This document shows, piece after piece, positions 27,709-41,659 of a stretch of 64,000 nucleotides of DNA. The position numbers were made by a program, and so were the translations under genes. The notes beneath the pieces are model-generated. The model was not told where the DNA came from and did no database searches. It saw only the letters and a program-made list of their open reading frames with translations. Numbering within the stretch: position 1 is the stretch's first letter; the number at the start of each line of letters is the position of its first letter. The stretch is taken from the NCBI RefSeq assembly GCF_902652985.1, contig NC_047033.1, positions 5,518,001 to 5,582,000 of the forward strand, given 5' to 3'. Source of the DNA: Pecten maximus (lineage: Eukaryota).

Positions 27709-28575
27709 TGTGGCACCCTGTTAATTTTGGTCATTTTAACTGAATTACTTTTATAATTGCTCGTTGTGTTGTATTTGTGCTGTTCGTATCCTACGTCGTG
27801 TTTATTTGTCTGTTAGGTAAATGTTCTGTACTCGTCGTGTGATTGTCACGTCGTGCGTATCCTATGATGTGTTACAGGTAGCCGTCAGTTATGGACCGAG
27901 ACCACAATTAGCTTCGCTATATCTTTCATTGTAATATCAAAATTCATAATAAATTCCCAAAATCTCAAATGCAACTTTCCATCTCACCTGGCCAAGACCA
28001 ACATCTGAGAAGCAAAATATAAAAGTTTCAACCCAGCATGTTGGGCATTTTCTGGAGATAGCTGTCAAAATGTGTCACCAACGTGGATTATATACATCCG
28101 GGTCAGGGGTAGAGGTCAAATCAGGACTCATCACACAGGGTCCTGGAGCACATAATAAATGATCAATATTATTATTTTACATCACAAAACCTAGAGATCT
28201 TTACTATAAATCCACATTAAATTCATCAACAAAAATCAAGTTCAAAGAGGTATTTGATTTGTTTTCCTAAAATACATACATTTTTGAGGGGACTTCATTC
28301 GTGGGGCCTGAACCCGGAAGTACTTAATTGTGGTCTCAGTCCTATTATGTGCTTTGTATGTGTGGTTCGTGAGTGTCCGGAGAGTATGTTCGTGTGATGT
28401 ATGTTTGTAATAAACTGGTTTGACCACTGACGGACAGGACATGCGCATTGCGTTTCTTCTTCTTTCTTTCTATCCCTTTTTGGCGCTCTTTCCCCAGTTC
28501 CACTCTGTACATTGGTCAGAGAAGACGCTTTATGCCAATTTTCCATACATTTGTAAATACGTCCTGGGCACCACA
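27709..28575 (+). repeat. Gypsy 3' LTR interrupted by a MITE
   Basis: Starts TGTGGCACCC after the PPT and ends GGGCACCACA (TG..CA, imperfect inverted termini). AATAAA near 28409. Confidence 0.8.
27892..28344 (+). mobile_element. ~450-bp TIR MITE, copy 1, inside the Gypsy LTR
   Basis: TIR GGACYGAGACCACAATTA at both ends; a second, inverted copy lies at 31086-39765. TSD ambiguous. Confidence 0.88.
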
Positions 28576-30255: not shown

Positions 30256-32448
30256 CAATTCTAAAAGTTAGTGTATGAAGGAAACGATGTTTTCGTGTAA
30301 AAAGTATTCAAAAACACAAAAGACCATACCAAGATTCAAACAGATATTACGAAAATCCAAATCTAGCTGAGGAGGTACAGGTGTATAATTTCAATATGCA
30401 TGTATCTCACAATTTACCACCTGCAATATCAAAAGATTAGTTTAAACTCTGTTTTATTTGTCAATTTCCATTTAACAATATGTAGACAATTATATAAACT
30501 ATACAAAAAGGAATCAGAAACAAGTGTCAAGACTCTGAAATAAATCTGACACCATCTGGATTGATTGCGCATGCGTGTGGCAAGATGGACGTGGATTTTC
30601 TTCAGGTGTGACAACTATTTGATATATTTTATATTCCGGGCATTTATGTGGTCATATACAGTGTGGATTATTTGTCTATACATGATTATTACTCATGGGG
30701 AAAAACGCACAGTCCAAAAAGAAGAAAAGGAAGGACGGTTCGGGAGTTACACTGCCTAGTAAATTGCAGGTAACGTCCACATCACCTCAGCACGACAATA
30801 TGGCGACACCGTACATGCACGCGCCTATAGACTCCACTGGCGCCGCGACGCCTAACAACTATGCGGTGTCGCATTTGAACAAATGGAAAAAACTATGCTT
30901 GAAATGAAAACAGAAATTGAAACACTGAAGGATACCGTTATGAAACAAGATAAACTTTTACAAAAACAAGAGTGTCACCACTATGACGTTGAAAATAGAA
31001 TAGTGCAATTGGAACAAGCAAATGAAAACTTAGAACATGAAAATTTCACTCTAAATGAAGAAAGACTTAAACAACAGACACATAATAGGACTGAGACCAC
31101 AATTAAGTACTTCCGGGTTCAGGCCCCATGAATAAAGTCCCCTCAGAAATGTATGTATTTCATGGAAATAAATCAAATGCCTGTTTGAACTTGATTTTTG
31201 TCTATGAATTTATAGTAGCGATGTCAATCTATGTTTTGTGATGTAAAATATTAATATTGATCATGTATTTTGTGCGCCAGGGTCCTGTGTGAAAAGTCCT
31301 GATTTGACCTCTACCCCTGACCCGGATGTATATAATCCACGTTGGTGACACATTTTGACAGCTACATTTTTGTATCTCCAGAAAATGCCCAACATGCTGG
31401 GTTGAAACTTTTATATTTTGCTTCTCAGATGTTGATTCACACATCATTTCATTCATTTCACAACCACCTGACCCCCGGGCTGTCCACACGTTCCCTTGAC
31501 CTCTCCCGTAGAAGTAGTTAGAATAGTGTCGACAGCTGTTTTAGTGTTAGGATATAGATAGTAATCCCCAGTGTGATTTCTTTTTGTGGATATTTAGTGC
31601 GATAGTGTGATATTCTTGGATTATACTGTGTGTTGTGCATCCTGGCCGAGAACAGAATAGTCACCGAAATTCCAGAGAAGTCCTGCTGAAAAGTTAAGTT
31701 CTTTAGTTGTAGTTTATCAGATAGTGTTATCAGATAATTTATTTTACAGCAGCAGGACTAATTTCCTACATACAATAAGTATCGGCCTTTAATTAAGCCA
31801 TATTCCCGCAACAGTAGATATATTATTTTGATTTACTTTAGGCATATCTATTAGCGAACCAAATTTCATTACATTAAGCAATCATCTAATTTAAATTTTT
31901 TGTTTTTGTTTTCCTCTCATTTTTAATTCAGTCAGATTGTTTTTGGAAAAGCTCTATTTCAGTTAAAATTTTAAGTAATTTTTAAGTATATACTGAACTG
32001 AGTTTTACAATAGTATCCATCTATCGATCCGTAGGAGCTAAAGTATTTAATAAGCACACATAAGTATAACCCACTATCAAAATTTTTATTATCATTATCT
32101 TTACCTTTTTAATTTCTTTTTACTACCCATTTTAATATAATTCCTATCTATTTTCTTTTAAAAAAATTCTATCTTGCCTTCTCCTTCATGTTTTAAGACC
32201 TCTTTATAAATTGTCACTTAATCCCCTAACAATAGAAATACCTTCTCTCAGGTAGGTTCTATTGTTTATATCTGGCCAGGTATCTCACCTTCACGCCTGA
32301 CCGACCCCACGCTTATCTGTACCGGACACCTGTCCACGCTCTCGATCTATATCCCGCCATCTATCACTTTTCAACTTTCTATAAGAGTTACCTCCCCTAG
32401 AACAGGTAAACTCTTTCTTTCTACTTTAGAATAATTACAAAGTTTTCA

Positions 32449-33645
32449 ATGGCCCCAGCCCCATCCATCTCTAACCCTGCGGTGGTTATCCTCTCCCCTA
32501 AAGAGAGGAAGCCACTAAATGCAGGACGTGTACGTGGAGATATCTCCGCGTTCACGGGCGTCACTAGTGACGTCAGAGATATACGGATGTTGCCATCAGG
32601 CATTATCCTAATTCTCTGCGCCACCTTAGTGACGCTCAAGAAGGCGCTACTTGTAAACCAAGTAGACGGTACCCCCTGTACCGCGCGGCTATCTAAGCGG
32701 CCCTTCAATGCCCCTCCCAAGCCCCGAGCCAACCTCCGTAACGTGTCCCCCACCTCCAAAGGGGTTATATACCGCATCCCTTTAACTACACCAACAACAA
32801 ACCTCACGTCAATTAATAATGTAAAAAATGCAAGTAGGATGTACAATAAAACAAACAAAAACACAACATCAATCTTGCTAGAATTTAATTCTTCCACACT
32901 ACCAAGGAAAGTAGTTTTCAATCAAATTACATACCCTGTTACAAGATTTAACGCTCCACGAACACAACAACAACACCGACAAAAACAAACCAAAACAAGC
33001 ACAGGCCCTGAGACACACATCAAACCCTCCTACACTAATACGACAAATACGTCACTATACTCCGACATTGTCAGAAACAAACACACAGAAACCACCAAAA
33101 CACAACCCAAACACACAGGTGTATATGTCACGGCAGAATTTTTAGGAAATTTTTTACTTATAGCCCGTGACACACACATAACAGATAGGGAAGCAATCCA
33201 CAAGGTTCGTGACCTCATCAACAAACAAAATGGACACGTGATCGCAGACAGTACACCCATCAACACACCAACACAATCTACACCCAAAACAACACAAACA
33301 ACACCAACAACACAGCCTTCACCACCAACAACACCGATCCTATTCACACAAACAACACCACAAACACAAACAACATCAACAGAAACACAAACAGAAACAC
33401 CGTCAGAACATTTCATACACCTACTTGACAGTTCCGAGGAGCTAGACAGCTCAACTATATCCAAACCCAGAACACCAAGAACACCGGTAGGTATGGGTCG
33501 GTACAAAACACTACAAACAGACAAGACCCCCACAAACAAACAACAAACACCCTCACGACCAAACACAAGATCAAGGGCCAAACAAACAAACACGCCAACA
33601 AGAACAGGACACAGCAAACGCAAACTACAGTACAGAAAATACTAG
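32449..33645 (+). CDS. LINE ORF1 protein, 398 aa, Thr/Pro/Gln-rich C-half
   Basis: Open ORF directly upstream of ORF2. KGVIYRIPL..SILLEF..LPRKV..YPV resembles the pre-zinc-knuckle region of I/Jockey ORF1. Confidence 0.8.
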   Translation: MAPAPSISNPAVVILSPKERKPLNAGRVRGDISAFTGVTSDVRDIRMLPSGIILILCATLVTLKKALLVNQVDGTPCTARLSKRPFNAPPKPRANLRNVSPTSKGVIYRIPLTTPTTNLTSINNVKNASRMYNKTNKNTTSILLEFNSSTLPRKVVFNQITYPVTRFNAPRTQQQHRQKQTKTSTGPETHIKPSYTNTTNTSLYSDIVRNKHTETTKTQPKHTGVYVTAEFLGNFLLIARDTHITDREAIHKVRDLINKQNGHVIADSTPINTPTQSTPKTTQTTPTTQPSPPTTPILFTQTTPQTQTTSTETQTETPSEHFIHLLDSSEELDSSTISKPRTPRTPVGMGRYKTLQTDKTPTNKQQTPSRPNTRSRAKQTNTPTRTGHSKRKLQYRKY

Positions 33646-33726
33646 AAGCCACATAGATCACCAAAACAAACTTAGACGCCCTTCACATTCAATAAAGTCC
33701 TAAATGACCAGTCCGGCCTCACTGTT

Positions 33727-36700
33727 ATGCATTGGAATGCAGGAGGTCTCAGGCCCAAAATTTCAGAATTAAAATCCTTCCTTAATGACAATTCCCCGGA
33801 TATTCTTTGTATTCAGGAAACTCAACTGAAACAAAAACACAAAAGTTTAAAAATTAATGGTTACAACACTCCTTTTAGGTACGATTCGGACCAAGGTTTG
33901 GCCATTTATGTAAAAAGCGGAATTGCCTACAAAGAGTATGAAATCAAAGATAAAGATCTTGTGGCTCTTGGTATAGAATTACACAACAAGTCACACAAAA
34001 CAATCATACTCAACATATACCTCTCACCAACAAAACCAATACCATTTAACTCTCTGGTTAACCTTATAGAAAACACTGACACAAACAACATTATAGTTAC
34101 CGGAGATTTTAATGGACACCATACACTTTGGGGGAGCAACAAAAACAACAAACGAGGGGACACTATATATGAATGGGCAGTTCAGACTGGTCTAACCATA
34201 CTAAACGAGGGTAAACCAACTAGAGTAGACATAGCTCGAGGTATCGAATCACATCTAGATATAACATTAGCAACACCAAACTTAGCGAGTAAATGTAGCT
34301 ACTGGAATACCCTTGATAGCACTCTAGGATCAGACCACTATCCAGTTTTGGCTCAATTCGATTTTAAACCACATGTTAATACTATTCAGTATCCCCCTAG
34401 ATGGGTTTTTAATAAAGCGAATTGGAATCAATTTAATCTTTTAACCGAAAACATCCAAATTGATGAAATTTATGATGAAAATGTAGATATTTTCAATGAT
34501 AATCTAACAAGAGCTATTTTAGACCTAGCATCAGTATGTATCCCTAGAACGTCAGGAAAGCCAAAAACTAGGAAAAATAATCCATGGTGGAACGATGAGT
34601 GTAGGTTAGCAAAGAAACTAAAAAAGAATAGTGAAAGTAAATGGAGGGCAAACAAAAATAACGAAACGCTAAAAGCAAATTATGTCAGATGTAAAACAAA
34701 TTTTAATAACATTATTCAAAACGTCAAACGAAATCATTGGGAAGAGTTTTGTTCATCATTAAATAATAAAACAAATCTAAAAAATGTATGGTCAAAGGTC
34801 AAAGCTATTCAGGGAATAAATAGAACTGAAATCCCTATATTAGGTAAAAACAACATTACCGATAAGGAAAAGGCTGATACTCTAGCTAAACAATATCAGA
34901 GCGCTAGCAGTAATGATAACTTAACTCCTGAATTTAAATTAAATAAAGCTAACAATCAGGATAACATAGACGACGTTATAAGTAACCCCGGCCCCAATAC
35001 AGGTGAGCTGAACTGTCCCATTTACAATCACAGAATACAACAATGCACTTCAGAACAAGAAAAACACATCTCCAGGAGATGACAACATTTCATACACCAT
35101 CCTCAAACACTGTACAAACAACATAACAGAAATAATACTTAAACTCTTAAACCACATATGGCAACAGGGAACTATACCTGAGGCGTGGAAAAAGGCCGTA
35201 GTTATACCTATACTAAAACCAGGTAAAAATCCGCAGGAACCTGCATCATATAGGCCCATAGCATTAACTTCTCACCTCTGTAAAGTAATGGAAACTATGG
35301 TAAATAACAGGCTAGTATATTCACTTGAAAGCTCAGGTATCATCAACGAGGAACAGAGCGGGTTCCGTAAAGGTAGATCTACGCTAGACCCCCTTCTTAG
35401 ACTCACCTCAGATATTAAAAAAGGTTTGAACCTAAAACGAAGTACACTAGCTGTCTTTTTAGATCTAGAAAAAGCATATGATCTTATTTGGCATGATGGT
35501 CTTTTAGTATCACTTAAAAATCATGGTATAACTGGTAACATATTTAAATTCGTAAGCAGTTTCCTGAAAAAACGTAAGATCCAGGTTAGAATTCATGACA
35601 CGTTATCAGATCAATATGAACTAGAAAACGGTGTAGCACAGGGTAGTGTAATATCCCCTACTCTTTTTAATATCTACATTAATACTCTGTCACAAACGCT
35701 CCACAATAAAACCAAGTTAGCACAATTTGCAGATGACGGATGTATTTGGAGTACAGGTAAAAACATTAGATATTTAACCAAACATATCCAGACAACGTTG
35801 ACAGCAATTAATGAGTGGGCTAATAAGTGGGGGTTTAAACCATCTAAACAGAAAACAATAGCAATGTATTTCTCTAAAAGTAAGAAACTTCCTGAACTAT
35901 ACCTAGGACAAACTAAACTAAAATTTGAGAAACAAGTTAGGTATTTAGGCATGATAATAGATCATAAACTAACTTGGAGTAAACATATTAAATATGTTAA
36001 GGAGACATGCCAAAAGGCAATAAACACTATGAGATATATTTCAGGATGTAAATTTGGCGCCAATAAAACTACACAATTAATGCTATATAAAGCGTTAGTT
36101 AGATCTAGGCTAGATTATGGGTGCCAGGTATATAATACAGCTAGCGACACAGTACTAAAACATCTAGATGTAATTCAACATTCAGCCTTAAGAGTAGCGC
36201 TAAGGGCAATCAAAAACACCAATACCAACAGTTTATTAGCAGAGGCAGGTGAACCCCCCTTAACTCTCAGGCGAGAAAATCTTACATTAAAATACTGGGC
36301 TAGGACACAAAGTCATGGTGATAAATTTCTCCTAAATAAAGAAATAAAAGATAGTGAACATCCCGTCAATAACAACAGGGCTCCATATCCATCAGAAATA
36401 ATTAGACTAAAACAAAAGTATGGTTTAGACAGCGTTAAAATATCCCGCAAACAAGATTTCCAAGTCCCGTGGTTAAAAACAGACCCTAATGTATCGCTAG
36501 ACCTCCTAAAGATGATAGATAAACAAAACGACCCGATAGGCGCTAAAAACCTAGCATTAGAACTGATAGATCGAAAATACAATAACTTTACTAAATTCTA
36601 TACTGACGGCTCAAAAAATCCAGACAGTAACCGTGTAGGTTTAGGAATATATAACAACACCTATAAAGTTAAAAAGTCATTACGGTTAAGCGATAGAGCA

Positions 36701-37462
36701 TCGGTTTATACAGCAGAGCTTATGGCCATTCAAATTGCTTTGATAGGTGTAAAGAAAAATCACACTAAATTTGATAAAGTAGTAATTCTTTCGGATTCCC
36801 TTAGCTCCTTACAATCTCTAATAACTGGTAACAGCAGTAGGCCTAAACTACTTAATGCAATCCACTACATGATATCAGAGATTGATCAACTAGGTATAGA
36901 TCTTCAATTTGAATGGATCCCATCGCACGTAGATATACCAGGTAATGAGGTAGCAGATCAGTTAGCTAAAGAAGCCCTAGGGTCAAATGTCATCCATCTA
37001 AACATAGACCTGAGTGTCACAGAGGTCGTTAGTATAATCAATAATAAAACCCAATCGATATGGCAGGATAGTTGGTCGAAATTAACTAATAACTGGCTCA
37101 GAAACATCGAGGATAATGTCAAAATCAAAACTCAGTTATATAGTTATAATAAAACAGAGGATACTGTAATAACTAGACTTAGATTAGGATACACCAAGCT
37201 TGGTCATAACATCAATAGAATTAAGAAAGAAGTCAGTCCCTATTGTATAAACTGTGGCGAACCAGAAACAATAGAACATATCCTATTCGAATGCAGCGCC
37301 CATGATAACCATAGGTCAGACTTTAAAGACGAAATAGAAAATTTAGATAAAATCAAATTTGATACTAAGTCTATACTAAATCCTCCTAAACAACACATGA
37401 GACACATTTTCGATCTTCTCACTGCATATCTCACTGCTATTGATTATCTAGACAAGATCTAA
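33727..37462 (+). CDS. LINE ORF2 (APE endonuclease, RT, RNase H, C-terminal Zn finger) with one frameshift at ~35016
   Basis: WNAGGL, IQET, GDFNGH, SDH; DLEKAYD, QGSVISP, FADD; YTDGS, AELMAI, SDSLS, WIPSHVDIPGNEVAD; CINCGEPETIEHILFEC. Removing one base near TGTCCCA restores PFTITEYNNAL..SPGDD. Confidence 0.9.
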
Positions 37463-38075
37463 GATAGCGATACTTAACAACCATTTTTTACACACCTAAC
37501 ATTAACGTACGTTATCCCTGCAAAAACAACTCACTTTTTTCCCAGTTACACGGTTCTTTTTTTTTTCTCTCTCTCTCTCTCTCTCACTCTCTTTAACAAC
37601 AACACAATGCCCTTTTTTTTTTTTTTTTTTTAAACATTAGGATCCTCAGGATACCCAGGGAGACTGTTCCAGGGGGGATAACTACTGATCTCTCCATTAA
37701 TTGGGACATACTGAGACTCCAGGAGGTCTGGGGTCTCCTCCTCTGTGCCCCAACCCCCGTATGTCAGACGTCATATACTCAACAGGTGTCCACCCCGGGG
37801 TGTCTGAGGTATCTATCCTCCCTGTTCGAGCTATGTGGCGTTTGATACCACAACACATATTCCTAAAGGGTCACACAACAAACACACACGAACATGTGAC
37901 ACCACACATGTATATATTCCTCACTTTACTACCAACCCTTATAATAGATCCCACCCCTACTCTGCAGTAATGTCTGCCCCGGGGTGGTCCTAGGTTTATC
38001 ATCCCTGCTACGAGGAACGTACCTATTTTTATACTCAACACCACATTCACTGTAGGGATACGTACGTTTACAAAC

Positions 38076-38535
38076 ACACCAAACAAGCATACACCACGAT
38101 AGGACATAATGTGTATTGTACAGCTTCGCACCTCGTCAGGTGCACTTAGTAGTGAATGATCCGTACAAAAGCATTATAAACACTCACACCAAACAAAAAT
38201 ACAACACGCATACACCACGATAGGACATAATGTGTATTGTACAGCTTCTCACCTCGTCAGGTGCACTTAAGTGAATGATCTGTACAAAAGCATTATAAAC
38301 TCTCACACCAAACAAAAATACAACACGCATACACCACGATAGGAAATAATGTGTATTGTACAGCTTCTCACCTCGTCAGGTGCACTTAAGTGAATGATCT
38401 GTACAAAAGCATTATAAACACTCACACCAAACAAAGATACAACACTCATACACCACGATAGGAAATAATGCGTATTGTACAGCTTCTCACCTCGTCAGGT
38501 GCACTTAAGTGAATGATCTGTACAAAAGCATTATA
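38076..38535 (+). repeat. Four tandem ~119-121-bp structured repeats in the LINE 3' UTR
   Basis: ACACCACGAT recurs at 38091, 38212, 38331 and 38450. Each unit has a self-complementary core and an A/C-rich linker. Confidence 0.92.
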
Positions 38536-39218
38536 TATTCCCCAAACCACACAAAAAGCGCATCGCAACATATGAACATCTATACCATTCATACACAAAA
38601 TAGGTAACACAATTTGACATCAGATATCCACCTACTCTGCAGGTGTGTCTGCCCCGGAGTGGTCCGGGTTGTAGACCCCCTGTGACGAGGAACGTGGTAT
38701 CTACCTTCTAAAACATGTACCTAAATACACCAACACAAACCCCGAATATAGAGGTGGGGACCTCCCATGCCAATACCATCTGGCAACTCCCCTTTCTAAA
38801 CCCCCTTCCTCCCCTCCTATCTTTTCCTCTTACTTTTACTAATCGCTATCAAACTGTGCTTTATGTACATAGCACTGCTCCAGTAGGGTAGGCTTGTAGA
38901 TGATTATACACAGTAATCAACAGTCTCCCGAAAAACAGTCTTTGTATAATAACTCGCATTATCACATAATCCAAATTTCCTATACTTACCCAAACCCAGC
39001 ACTACCCCTCTATAATCACCCTATAACTACACTCTACATAACAAACTAGTCTGATCTATACCCTACCCCTTACCCATTCGAAAACACCATGGTTATAGCA
39101 ATACAAAATGGTGTCTAGAATTCCTACTATCAATAACAAAACTATATCCCACTAACAAACTACACCAAATTTTTCAAACCAATCTATACTCTATCTCACG
39201 CTATCTTCTACACTTCTT

Positions 39219-39325
39219 GTCCTTCGGAAGGGACGTTAATCCGGGGTCCGGTGTACGGTGAGTCACGCCGTGCACGTTAAAGATCCTCTGCTGGTTTTCA
39301 AACAAGAGTAGGCTAATTGCTAGCC
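39219..39325 (+). other. Deu/Nin-like SINE core domain inside the LINE 3' UTR
   Basis: GTCCTTCGGAAGGGACGTTAATCCGGGGTCC...ACGTTAAAGATCC...TTTTC..AAGAGTAGG matches the recalled DeuSINE/AmnSINE1 core motif order. Confidence 0.7.
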
Positions 39326-41659
39326 GCCACAGAGTATAGGTTCATATAGGTCTCGATTAGGATAACGTAGGGTATTAAGGCAATTCAGTGACAGGTCAAA
39401 ATTTTTTTTTTTTTTAGACATAGAGATAATCGTCTGTCCCTCTCATATTAGATCATTTGGCGATGACGAAATGCGAAATTGCTCCCTATTTAGTGCCCCG
39501 ACCCACCCCTTTCCCCTTAGTGTCCTAGGCTCGGTTATAACCGGAACAAGGACGTTAAGCCCCATCAATCAATCAATCAATCAACATTTTGACAGCTATC
39601 TCCAGAAAATACCCAACATGCTATGTTGAAACTTTTATATTTTGCTTCTCACATGTTGGTCTTGGCCAGGTGAGATGGAAAGTTGCATATGAGATATTGG
39701 GAATTTACTATGAATTTTAATGTTACAATGAAACATATAGCGAAGCTAATTGTGGTCTCGGTCCACATGACATGAAGTTCAATCTAATTTTCAACGGCAT
39801 TACGGAAACGGAAAACACACAGGACGGACAAGCGACGGAAACAGTGCTGAGAGAGTTTATTAAAACAACATTGAAAGTTGACAGTGCTGATGACATTTTA
39901 TTTCATAACGTTCACAGGTTACAACCTAGATCTGACGGGAAACCGAGGGGAATTATCGCCAAATTTGTGCAGTACGCGGATCGCGACCGTGTTCTGAAAG
40001 CAGTTCCGGAGGGCCTTAGAGACAAGCACCATAACTCGGTGTACAAGCAATTTCCTCCCGAAATAGCACAACGAAGGGCGAAACTGTATCCAAAATTAAG
40101 AGAACTTAAAAACAGCGGCAATAATGTGAAATTAGTTTACGACAAGCTGTATGTAAATGGTTCCCTATATGAGGCCCCCGCTTCGGAAAATGCGCGCCAA
40201 TGGAATGGACCCGCCCGCGACAGAGATCATGCACGAGGGGTCGCTTATTAGGACAGTCGCCCAGACGACCTCCAGACGGACCACACCACTACACAACTCA
40301 ATGTTGGTTTTCTAAATGTCTGTGGTATCAAAACAAAACTACGCAATCCTGAATTTTTATCCTTAATTTCAGGATATGACATATTTATATGTGTAGAGAC
40401 AAAAACTGACGACCTTGATGATATTTCGCTTCCAAATGAGTATGATTTTCATCTGAAAAATAGAAAAAAATTAAAAGAAAAACCGGAGGTATTATAGTTA
40501 TATATAGAAAGATATTGTCTGATGTGTTACACTTTCATAACACTAAATCCGAATATGTTCAGTGCTTTGAAATATTAGAAAAATCTACAAATTCAAGAAA
40601 AAGTTTCTTATTTGGGTGTGTATATATCCCGCCCGAGTACTCCAAATATTCTTCTGAAAATGCATTCACTGATTTTGAAGATGAATTGATTTCTTTATTT
40701 AATGAGGATAAAAAAGTAGTTTTGTTGGGAGACTTTAATGCGAGGACAGCGACAATATCTGACTATATTATGCCGGATAAAAAATTTGATTGATTTGTTA
40801 AATATTGTTGAAGATAATAATGATATAGACAATATGTATTCGTTTCAGCAGTTACTAGATCAAAATATTTCTCTAACAAGATATAACAAGGATATAGCAA
40901 ATCCAAACAAATATGGTTTAAGGTTAATCGAGTTATGTAAACAATGCTCCATTTTTATTGCTAATGGTCGTATAGGAAAAGATAAATTCATCGGCGAAAC
41001 AACATGCCGAGATGTCAGTCTATTTGACTATCTTTTATTGTCAGCTGACGCGTTTAAATATATATCCCAATTTGAATTAATAATGAAGTTGGTCCTTCTA
41101 ATCATGTAAAATGGAATCCCGTGAAAAAGGAGGAATTTACAACAGCACTTAATTCAGACCCTGATAATAAATTGCGAGATATCGATAGTAAATTAAATGA
41201 AATGTTAACACTTGCCAATGTTAATAAGGTTTATATTAATAAGGTTGTTGATGATCTATGTAATGTACTGACAACTACTGCCTCGAATGTATTTGGGGTG
41301 ATTTCTAATACACGATGTAAAGTTAAAACTAAGCAAGGGAGTAAACCGTGGTTTAACAAAGACTGTAAAGTAGCCCTTGATGCATTTAACAAGATAAAAA
41401 ACAAATACAAAACCGATAAGTCACCAGAAAATAAAACACAGTTAAAGGTCAAAGGTAGGGAATTACGTAAACTAATTAATGTAAATTTTAGGAATTACCA
41501 GGATAAATGTGCCAAAGAACTAAGGACACTTTCCAAAAGTAACCCTAAGATGTTTTGGAAAATACTTAACAAATTTAGTATATCAAAAAAGAAGAGTCCA
41601 TACGTACCTTTAGATTTGATTTACAAATATATACTTCAAGAAAATAAATAGTGACAGAG

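What the first reader, a model, noticed from the sequence alone, without database searches (positions are those of the whole stretch)
31350..31445. LINE whose 5' end carries a copy of its target's downstream sequence, from a different MITE copy
Seen: the I-type LINE sits in a MITE with a clean 15-bp TSD. Right after the 5' TSD come CATTTTTG and 62 bp (31373-31434) that repeat the MITE sequence downstream of the insertion site (39597-39658). The 62 bp differ from that local flank at 4 positions but are identical to the reverse complement of the other MITE copy (27999-28060). A simple long TSD on a nearly intact LINE should match the local flank. Inference: (a) the family targets this MITE and carries target-homologous sequence at the 5' end of its RNA, possibly for site selection or second-strand priming, which I do not know to be described for I-group LINEs; or (b) this is a one-off templated repair patch copied from the inverted MITE copy 3.3 kb away.
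Basis: partly seen in the sequence, partly recalled or inferred. Interest (0 to 1): 0.85.

Follow-up and report, generated by a model that had tools for sequence, protein, structure and literature searches.

The report
One-off MITE patch heading a LINE
One copy of a scallop jumping gene (a LINE) carries at its head 62 bases borrowed from another copy of the small transposon it landed in, which is a scar of one messy insertion rather than a homing device; more notably, this LINE family tends to land 21-25 bases after TATA boxes, right where genes start.

Summary
A 15-bp TSD (31350-31364 and 39584-39598) is followed by 8 filler bases. Then come 62 bp (31373-31434) that differ at 4 sites from the local downstream MITE sequence and match the inverted neighbour copy perfectly.

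Reading (a), a family-wide target-homologous leader, is refuted:
- Six other near-identical full-length copies lack the patch.
- The 29 other 3' ends examined lie at unrelated sites.
- Of 370 genomic 3' termini, only this one abuts the MITE site.
- Other TSDs are 7-14 bp with clean junctions.

Reading (b), a one-off patch from a non-local MITE copy, holds in general. The donor cannot be named: the 62 bp are near-consensus, and 128 genomic places share the diagnostic 20-mer. The local variant is unique in the genome. The local MITE is old (about 6% diverged) and the LINE is young (about 0.5%), so the patch did not come from the local flank. Whether a DNA or an RNA template was used is unresolved. 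Public short-read unitigs neither confirm nor refute the junction.

By-product: insertions of this family sit 21-25 bp downstream of TATA boxes (8 of 16 sites against a 4.6% background). They include the cap sites of H1, H2A, H2B and H3 genes. The MITE has TATATAAT 21 bp upstream of the TSD.

The parts
31079..31349 (+). Left part of the host MITE up to the insertion point. Its terminal inverted repeat starts at 31088.
   Evidence: It is 92-93% identical to the inverted copy at 27892-28351. The family has at least 600 candidate copies.
31329..31336 (+). TATATAAT box inside the MITE, 21 bp upstream of the TSD start.
   Evidence: The same spacing is seen at other insertion sites of the family.
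31350..31364 (+). 5' copy of the 15-bp target-site duplication.
   Evidence: identical to 39584-39598.
31365..31372 (+). 8-nt filler CATTTTTG. It resembles TSD bases 2-8 with one extra T.
   Evidence: Its junction with the patch is unique in the genome.
31373..31434 (+). 62-bp patch: a copy of MITE sequence that normally lies just downstream of the insertion point. It is of consensus (C-subfamily) type, not of local type.
31435..31463 (+). 29-nt copy-specific 5' leader of the LINE. Every full-length copy has a different 6-29 nt stretch here.
31464..39565 (+). Conserved LINE body. ORF1 is at 32449-33645. ORF2 has an APE endonuclease part at 33727-35082 and an RT plus RNase H part at 35288-37462, with a frameshift between them. 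The long 3' UTR holds 119-bp tandem repeats at 38082-38540.
39566..39583 (+). 3' tail, (CAAT)4CA.
39584..39598 (+). 3' copy of the 15-bp TSD.
39597..39658 (+). Local counterpart of the patch. It carries four private changes (A, AT, C).
   Evidence: The 20-mer covering three of these changes is unique in the genome.
39659..39765 (+). Rest of the right part of the host MITE.
   Evidence: inverted repeat I1, 39584-39765 against 27892-28073, 95%.
27892..28351 (-). Neighbouring inverted MITE copy, one possible donor. Its segment 27999-28060 is identical to the patch.

Best explanation
This is a single complicated integration event, not a property of the LINE family. Shown: the LINE entered the MITE by ordinary target-primed reverse transcription. 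The first nick fell 21 bp downstream of the MITE's TATATAAT box, which is the family's usual geometry, and gave a normal 15-bp TSD. Inferred: before the 5' end was sealed, 62 nt of MITE sequence were copied from a template other than the local flank and joined to the complete LINE 5' end. Another 8-10 nt of stuttered filler lie between the TSD and the patch. The template was a consensus-type copy of the same MITE family. It could have been DNA or RNA. In the DNA case, the freed top-strand end TSD-3'OH pairs with a homologous copy, most simply the inverted neighbour 3.3 kb away on the same strand or the homologous chromosome, and is extended. In the RNA case, the reverse transcriptase runs on from the LINE RNA 5' end onto a transcript started at a MITE TATA promoter, which would begin about where the patch begins. 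The position of the filler, between TSD and patch rather than between patch and LINE, mildly favours the cDNA run-on version. The cis inverted neighbour mildly favours the DNA version. I cannot separate them.
For: - The structure is exact.
- The patch is not local. It has 4 differences in 62 bp, and the local variants are unique in the genome. They match the overall divergence of this MITE copy: 28 substitutions plus an 11-bp deletion against a family median of 8 differences.
- The LINE is young: 99.5% identical to L002 over 654 bp. The Poisson chance of 4 or more post-insertion changes in 62 bp is about 3e-4.
- The patch equals the C-subfamily consensus, found at 128 places and in 8 of 30 fetched MITE loci, one being the neighbour copy itself.
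- The event is one-off. Six other full-length copies lack it. Measured 5' junctions of other copies are clean, with TSDs of 7-14 bp. Both patch junctions are unique in the genome.
- The insertion site is explained by the TATA spacing rule.
- A precedent exists for the architecture TSD, variable nucleotides, target-like leader, element: the R1 ISR junctions (PMC2718515).
Against: - No independent read evidence exists. The best public runs hold only 0.50 of the sampled 31-mers. By my own count, about half of the possible 31-mers in the query are generic repeat words, so no junction-specific word need be present. No listed unitig bridges 31364/31373 or 31434/31435.
- The donor is not identifiable, because the neighbour copy has no private marker inside the 62 bp.
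- In a pure strand-invasion model the filler would be expected at the patch-LINE joint, not at the TSD-patch joint.
- In an RNA run-on model the switch into an internal position of a second RNA, with only 1 nt of overlap (G), is unusual.
Confidence: 0.55

Rival explanations
1. 5' transduction. A source LINE copy sat directly behind ...GATGTTG in a consensus-type MITE copy. It was transcribed from that MITE's TATA box, with a start about 62 nt upstream of the LINE. This chimeric RNA then inserted at the TATA-anchored site of a second MITE copy. The apparent collinearity follows from both the start site and the nick being set by the same TATA box.
For: - Every full-length copy has its own 6-29 nt leader upstream of the conserved CCACC. 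This would fit routine read-in from host promoters; it is my inference, not shown.
- The patch starts 34-36 bp after the TATA box, near where Pol II would start.
- The filler lies where LINE 5' junctions usually carry extra nucleotides.
- The R1 ISR junctions have the same architecture.
Against: - No copy in the assembly has the patch-LINE junction.
- Only 1 of 370 LINE termini abuts this MITE site, so two MITE hits in one lineage have a prior below about 1 in 300.
- The source would need an atypical insertion with a TSD of about 0-2 bp at ...GTTG.
Confidence: 0.1
2. A 77-bp TSD (TSD plus the 62 bp), followed later by gene conversion of the 5' copy by a consensus-type MITE copy and by a 10-bp insertion.
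For: - The conversion tract would only need to cover 31387-31428.
- No informative local variant lies in the roughly 90 columns upstream, so the tract length is unconstrained.
Against: - TSDs at the 15 other sites measured for this family are 7-14 bp, none long.
- It needs three separate events: a long TSD, a conversion and an indel.
- Conversion of the 3' copy instead is excluded, because no donor with the local variants exists.
Confidence: 0.1
3. Assembly artefact. The 72 extra bases were introduced by mis-consensus of long reads at a repeat boundary.
For: No public run holds more than half of the sampled words, and no listed unitig bridges the junctions.
Against: - The insertion itself is coherent: a perfect 15-bp TSD, MITE halves that fit together, and outer flanks that are contiguous in a paralogous locus on C10.
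- A spurious patch that is an exact 62-mer in direct orientation, together with a novel filler, is not a usual assembler error.
- There are no N nearby.
- A young insertion can be private to one animal.
Confidence: 0.1
4. One reading: the family targets this MITE and carries MITE-homologous sequence on its RNA for site choice or second-strand priming.
For: Only the architecture of this one copy. The mechanism is known for R2 and melanogaster-type R1.
Against: - Six other full-length copies lack the leader.
- The 29 other 3' junctions examined lie at unrelated sites.
- Only one of 370 termini is at the MITE site.
- The patch is downstream target sequence, whereas a priming leader should be upstream sequence.
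Confidence: 0.02

Closest known systems
ISR junctions of melanogaster-type R1 elements (Stage and Eickbush 2009, PMC2718515, read)
   Same: The architecture is the same: a normal TSD, then variable nucleotides, then 16-27 bp of target-gene sequence, then the full-length element. R1, like this element, has an APE-type endonuclease.
   Different: In R1 the extra sequence is upstream 28S sequence. It is carried on the RNA of most active copies and serves a single target. Here it is downstream target sequence, it is present in one copy only, it comes from a different copy of the repeat, and the family has many targets.
R2 elements whose ribozyme cleaves upstream in the 28S co-transcript (Eickbush, Burke and Eickbush 2013, PMC3774820, abstract read)
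   Same: Target-derived nucleotides on the 5' end of the template RNA can anneal to the target and prime second-strand synthesis.
   Different: No known ribozyme lies at this LINE's 5' end (Rfam). The leader is not shared by the family. The insertion sites are not a single sequence.
Irregular L1 5' junctions: extra nucleotides, microhomology, template jumps, and chimeras formed with endogenous copies by strand annealing. This rests on my own knowledge of the L1 cell-culture literature; related papers are listed but were not read.
   Same: These are one-off complex 5' joints made while the cDNA end is being resolved. They sometimes use homologous repeats elsewhere as template.
   Different: Here the borrowed segment is homologous to the target rather than to the element, and it is collinear with the TSD.
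Start-site targeting by Ty3 (LTR element) and upstream-of-tRNA targeting by Dictyostelium TRE5-A (LINE) through TFIIIB, which contains TBP (my own knowledge, not tested here)
   Same: Integration occurs at a fixed distance from a promoter element bound by basal transcription factors.
   Different: Those systems use Pol III genes. Here the anchor looks like a Pol II TATA box, with the nick 21-25 bp downstream. No protein contact was tested.
Tx1L LINEs inside Tx1D DNA transposons of Xenopus (my own knowledge)
   Same: A LINE sits inside a DNA transposon.
   Different: Tx1L is specific for a sequence in Tx1D. This LINE hits the MITE once in 370 copies.

Membership tests
Non-LTR retrotransposon with RNase H (I-like group) | APE-type endonuclease at the N-terminus of ORF2 | tested here: met
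   Exo_endo_phos_2 with E 9e-23 in 33727-35082.
Non-LTR retrotransposon with RNase H (I-like group) | Reverse transcriptase followed by an RNase H domain | tested here: met
   RVT_1 with E 2e-32 and RNase_H with E 1e-12 in 35288-37462. The ORF is separated from the endonuclease part by a frameshift.
Non-LTR retrotransposon with RNase H (I-like group) | Placement inside the I clade proper in an RT phylogeny | not tested
   No tree was built. Nimb, Ingi, Tad, LOA and I all fit the domain order.
Non-LTR retrotransposon with RNase H (I-like group) | Short TSD, 5' truncated copies, simple-repeat tail | tested here: met
   (CAAT)n tails, TSDs of 7-15 bp, and many truncation points.
Target-specific LINE with a target-derived RNA leader (R2 / melanogaster-type R1 model) | Leader shared by the full-length copies of the family | tested here: not met
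   six other full-length copies lack it.
Target-specific LINE with a target-derived RNA leader (R2 / melanogaster-type R1 model) | All copies in one target sequence | tested here: not met
   unrelated flanks, and only one copy at the MITE site.
Target-specific LINE with a target-derived RNA leader (R2 / melanogaster-type R1 model) | Leader corresponds to sequence upstream of the insertion point | tested here: not met
   the patch matches sequence downstream of the TSD.
5' transduction | A source copy with the same flank-element junction exists | tested here: not met
   the junction is unique in this assembly. Other haplotypes or individuals were not testable.
MITE (host element) | Terminal inverted repeats, small size, no ORF, high copy number | tested here: met
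   18-nt TIRs 94% complementary, pairs I12 and I13. The element is about 460 bp; at least 600 candidates at 96-97% identity. The MITE's own TSD was not examined.
TATA-anchored (start-site) targeting, proposed here and not a described family | TATA box at a fixed distance upstream of the first nick, with fixed orientation | tested here: met
   8 of 16 sites have TATAWW starting at -21 to -25, against a 4.6% background, binomial P 2e-7. The window was chosen after seeing the data. A/T peak at -21 to -16; one of three further sites has it.
TATA-anchored (start-site) targeting, proposed here and not a described family | Recognition through TBP or the pre-initiation complex | not testable with these tools
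   This needs biochemistry or ChIP.

The most novel reading that the evidence does not exclude
This LINE and its 365-bp short derivative form a TATA-box-anchored retrotransposon family that seeks transcription start sites. It nicks 21-25 bp downstream of a TATA box, so its 5' end lands 29-37 bp after the box, where Pol II starts. Each new copy is then transcribed from the captured host promoter. That would explain the different short leaders on every full-length copy, the repeated hits at the cap sites of four histone gene classes, and the tandem re-insertions. In this window, the 62-nt patch would be the start of a transcript from a MITE TATA promoter, copied onto the cDNA.
Probability: 0.3. 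Interest if true: 0.8.

Novelty: new variant of a known kind. Interest (0 to 1): 0.5.

Why it matters
The patch itself is a natural record of how a LINE's 5' end can be resolved with help from a homologous repeat. It is a rare and poorly understood step of target-primed reverse transcription, but as a single event it proves little. The family behind it matters more. A LINE whose insertion point is set by a Pol II TATA box would be a new kind of target choice for non-LTR elements. It would explain insertions that knock out or take over promoters, here those of H1, H2A, H2B and H3 genes. It would also give a testable model of a promoter-less retroelement that lives on captured host promoters.

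Tried and rejected
- Haplotig or empty-site search with both outer flanks. There is no second allele in the assembly, only an old paralogue on C10 that lacks the MITE.
- Reads. Only Logan unitigs were available, and they break in the repeats. The maximum word share of 0.50 roughly equals my own estimate of the share of generic repeat words in the query. The junction is neither confirmed nor refuted. The single read-laying run could not also cover the 3' flank, so the state of the empty allele stays unknown.
- Search for a MITE variant already containing the filler and for a source copy with the patch-LINE joint. Both joints are unique to the window. The 1-mismatch hits are of the order I would expect by chance for a 17-mer.
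- Search for other LINE copies at the same MITE site: none.
- Rfam scan of 31000-32500 for a 5' ribozyme: nothing.
- Literature searches for a TATA-anchored LINE or for LINEs in echinoderm or mollusc histone genes: nothing relevant was found. This does not prove novelty.
- Earlier-findings look-ups by sequence and by words added nothing on this family.
- A resemblance between the first-nick site (TGT^GTC) and the end of the patch (TTG^GTC) was considered as a second endonuclease site. It was dropped because other nick sites show no such consensus.
- A second TATA-like box (TATATT) 23 bp before the end of the patch was considered as the site of a source insertion. It would require a TSD of 0-2 bp, so it is kept only inside the transduction rival.

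Full report
**1. The observation**

A MITE of about 460 bp, with 18-nt terminal inverted repeats, is split by an 8.1-kb LINE.
- The 15-bp TSD ACATTTTGACAGCTA stands at 31350-31364 and again at 39584-39598, directly after the tail (CAAT)4CA at 39566-39583.
- After the 5' TSD come CATTTTTG (31365-31372) and then 62 bp (31373-31434) that repeat the MITE sequence normally following the TSD (39597-39658).
- The two 62-mers differ at 31387, 31399, 31400 and 31428.
- The 5' one is identical to the reverse complement of 27999-28060 in the inverted MITE copy 3.3 kb upstream.
- Both new junctions are unique in the 918-Mb assembly.

**2. The LINE**

- ORF2 has an APE-type endonuclease, a reverse transcriptase and an RNase H. 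It is broken by a frameshift between 35082 and 35288.
- ORF1 has no Pfam match.
- The tail is (CAAT)n.
- A 25-mer of the 3' terminus occurs 370 times in the genome.
- Earlier notes of this scan call the genome a scallop.

**3. Is the leader a family feature? No**

- Six other full-length copies, 93-99.5% identical to the window copy, start at window-equivalent 31447-31508. They have unrelated upstream DNA and no MITE-like leader.
- The 29 other fetched 3' junctions all lie in different, unrelated sequence.
- A pattern for tail plus the MITE site finds only the window copy.
- The other sites measured have TSDs of 7-14 bp, and the copies checked have clean 5' joints. The 15-bp TSD here is at the top of that range, and a 77-bp TSD would be an outlier.
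- Reading (a) is therefore refuted for the family.

**4. Where do the 62 bp come from?**

- In an alignment of the neighbour copy and 30 fetched MITE copies, the patch equals the family consensus except for one subfamily base (C in GCCCAAC). The local copy shares that base.
- The four local differences are private. A 20-mer covering three of them is unique in the genome. The patch-type 20-mer occurs at 128 places.
- Eight of 30 fetched MITE loci, one of them the neighbour copy itself, hold the whole 62-mer.
- The local MITE is an old copy: 28 substitutions plus an 11-bp deletion, about 6%, against a family median of 8 differences.
- The LINE is 99.5% identical to its nearest relative. Four post-insertion changes in 62 bp have a Poisson probability near 3e-4.
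- So the local variants predate the insertion, and the patch was copied from a non-local MITE template.
- Conversion of the 3' copy is excluded, because no donor with its variants exists.
- The neighbour copy is a good candidate, being in cis, inverted and identical. It carries no private marker inside the 62 bp, so identity to it is only a roughly 1-in-5 coincidence under other donors.

**5. Mechanism**

Two versions of a one-off event remain.

*DNA version.* After second-strand cleavage, the freed top-strand end (MITE left part plus TSD, 3'-OH) pairs with a homologous MITE copy. For the inverted neighbour this can happen by fold-back within the same strand. The homologous chromosome is another option. 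The end is extended by 62 nt and then joined to the cDNA end with 1 nt of overlap.

*RNA version.* The reverse transcriptase, having reached the LINE RNA 5' end, continues on a MITE-derived RNA to its 5' end and adds a few stuttered bases. The end is then joined to the TSD.

- The filler lies between the TSD and the patch, as in ordinary LINE 5' joints and in the R1 ISR junctions. This mildly favours the RNA version.
- The cis inverted neighbour mildly favours the DNA version.
- A true 5' transduction needs a source LINE directly behind ...GATGTTG in a MITE. No such copy exists in the assembly. With 1 MITE hit in 370 copies, a second hit in the same lineage is unlikely a priori.
- A long TSD followed by conversion needs three events.
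- An assembly error cannot be excluded, because public unitigs do not bridge the joints and no run holds more than half of the sampled words. By my count, about half of the query's possible words are generic repeat words. Against an error, the insertion is otherwise coherent, and its outer flanks are contiguous in a paralogue.

**6. Why this site: the TATA rule**

While measuring TSDs I saw that insertions of this family lie just downstream of TATA boxes.
- Of 16 independent sites with a recognisable TSD, 8 have TATAWW starting 21-25 bp before the TSD, against a 4.6% background (binomial P 2e-7). The test window was chosen after seeing the data.
- Four more sites have TATA-like boxes at the same place.
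- The A/T count peaks at -21 to -16.
- The LINE always points the same way as the promoter.
- The 5' joint therefore falls 29-37 bp after the box, where Pol II starts.
- Downstream flanks of four copies encode histone H3, an H2B-type histone, H2A and linker histone H1. The ATG lies 57-95 nt after the end of the LINE body, a distance that includes the (CAAT)n tail. Full-length copies L002/L003 and L004/L007 sit behind the H3 and H1 promoters.
- Independent insertions with different truncation points hit the same position in repeated targets (L020/L032, L025/L045, L022/L033, L017/L018).
- Runs of 72-75-bp units show repeated re-insertion at one site.
- Three further 5' flanks read from a pattern listing gave one clear TATAAA with the joint at +34, and two without a canonical box.
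- In the window the MITE has TATATAAT at 31329-31336, 21 bp before the TSD. This explains the position of the insertion.
- I found no description of such a LINE in four literature searches. That is not proof of novelty.

**7. Further pointers, not proven**

- Every full-length copy has its own 6-29 nt leader in front of the conserved CCACCTGACC. This would follow if copies are transcribed from the captured host promoter and carry a few host bases along.
- On that view the 62-nt patch begins where a MITE-promoter transcript would begin.
- No known ribozyme is present at the 5' end.

**8. Verdict**

- Interpretation (a) is refuted.
- Interpretation (b) is supported as a one-off non-local templated patch, with donor and template type unresolved.
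- The patch is a curiosity of moderate interest. The TATA-anchored target choice of the family is the part that deserves follow-up.

Noticed in passing
window 31329-31364; loci L002-L007, L018-L045: Insertions of this LINE family start 21-25 bp downstream of TATA boxes, always in promoter orientation. Eight of 16 sites meet the strict motif against a 4.6% background, and 4 more have TATA-like boxes. The element's 5' end falls 29-37 bp after the box.
   Followed up: partly
L039:1899-2309 (H3), L040:1902-2276 (H2B-type), L027:1052-1429 minus strand (H2A), L021:866-1405 minus strand (H1): LINE copies sit at the cap sites of four different histone gene classes. The ATG lies 57-95 nt after the end of the LINE body, a distance that includes the tail. 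H1 promoters carry two independent full-length insertions with the same TSD (L004, L007).
   Followed up: yes
L026, L033; G000 C4:24727493-24727736, C7:9732685-9732854: There are tandem runs of very short 3'-terminal LINE copies, about 60 bp plus tail, with a period of 72-75 bp. In L026 and L033 the units are separated by the same TSD. This indicates repeated re-insertion at one site.
   Followed up: partly
window 39217-39583; L023, L026, L028, L031, L033, L041: A discrete 365-bp short derivative starts at window-equivalent 39217 in many loci. It overlaps the SINE-core-like stretch noted earlier (s1-788525) and has no visible Pol III head. It follows the same TATA rule.
   Followed up: partly
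window 31435-31463; L002-L007: Each full-length copy has a different 6-29 nt leader upstream of the conserved CCACCTGACC, although the bodies are 98-99% identical. The leaders are rich in CATTC/ATTCAC-like motifs.
   Followed up: partly
G000 C15:36503577-36510564, C1:15047113-15048863, C7:5898701-5900895: Copies of the host MITE also occur in tandem arrays with a period of about 1.73-1.74 kb.
   Followed up: no
G000 C10:27234032-27234920 (L078, L083): This is an old paralogue (69-79% identity) of the DNA on both sides of the MITE. The two flanks lie about 24 bp apart there, so the paralogue lacks the MITE and the LINE. This confirms the MITE boundaries.
   Followed up: partly
window 38082-38540: The LINE 3' UTR holds four 119-bp tandem repeats at 93-97% identity. 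The copy number varies among other copies.
   Followed up: no
L020 (upstream of the 5' junction): The target upstream of this truncated copy contains a direct repeat CAAAAACGGACGACGG just before the TSD. It is either a feature of the target or another irregular 5' joint. There are 6 bp of microhomology (CGGATT) at the joint.
   Followed up: no
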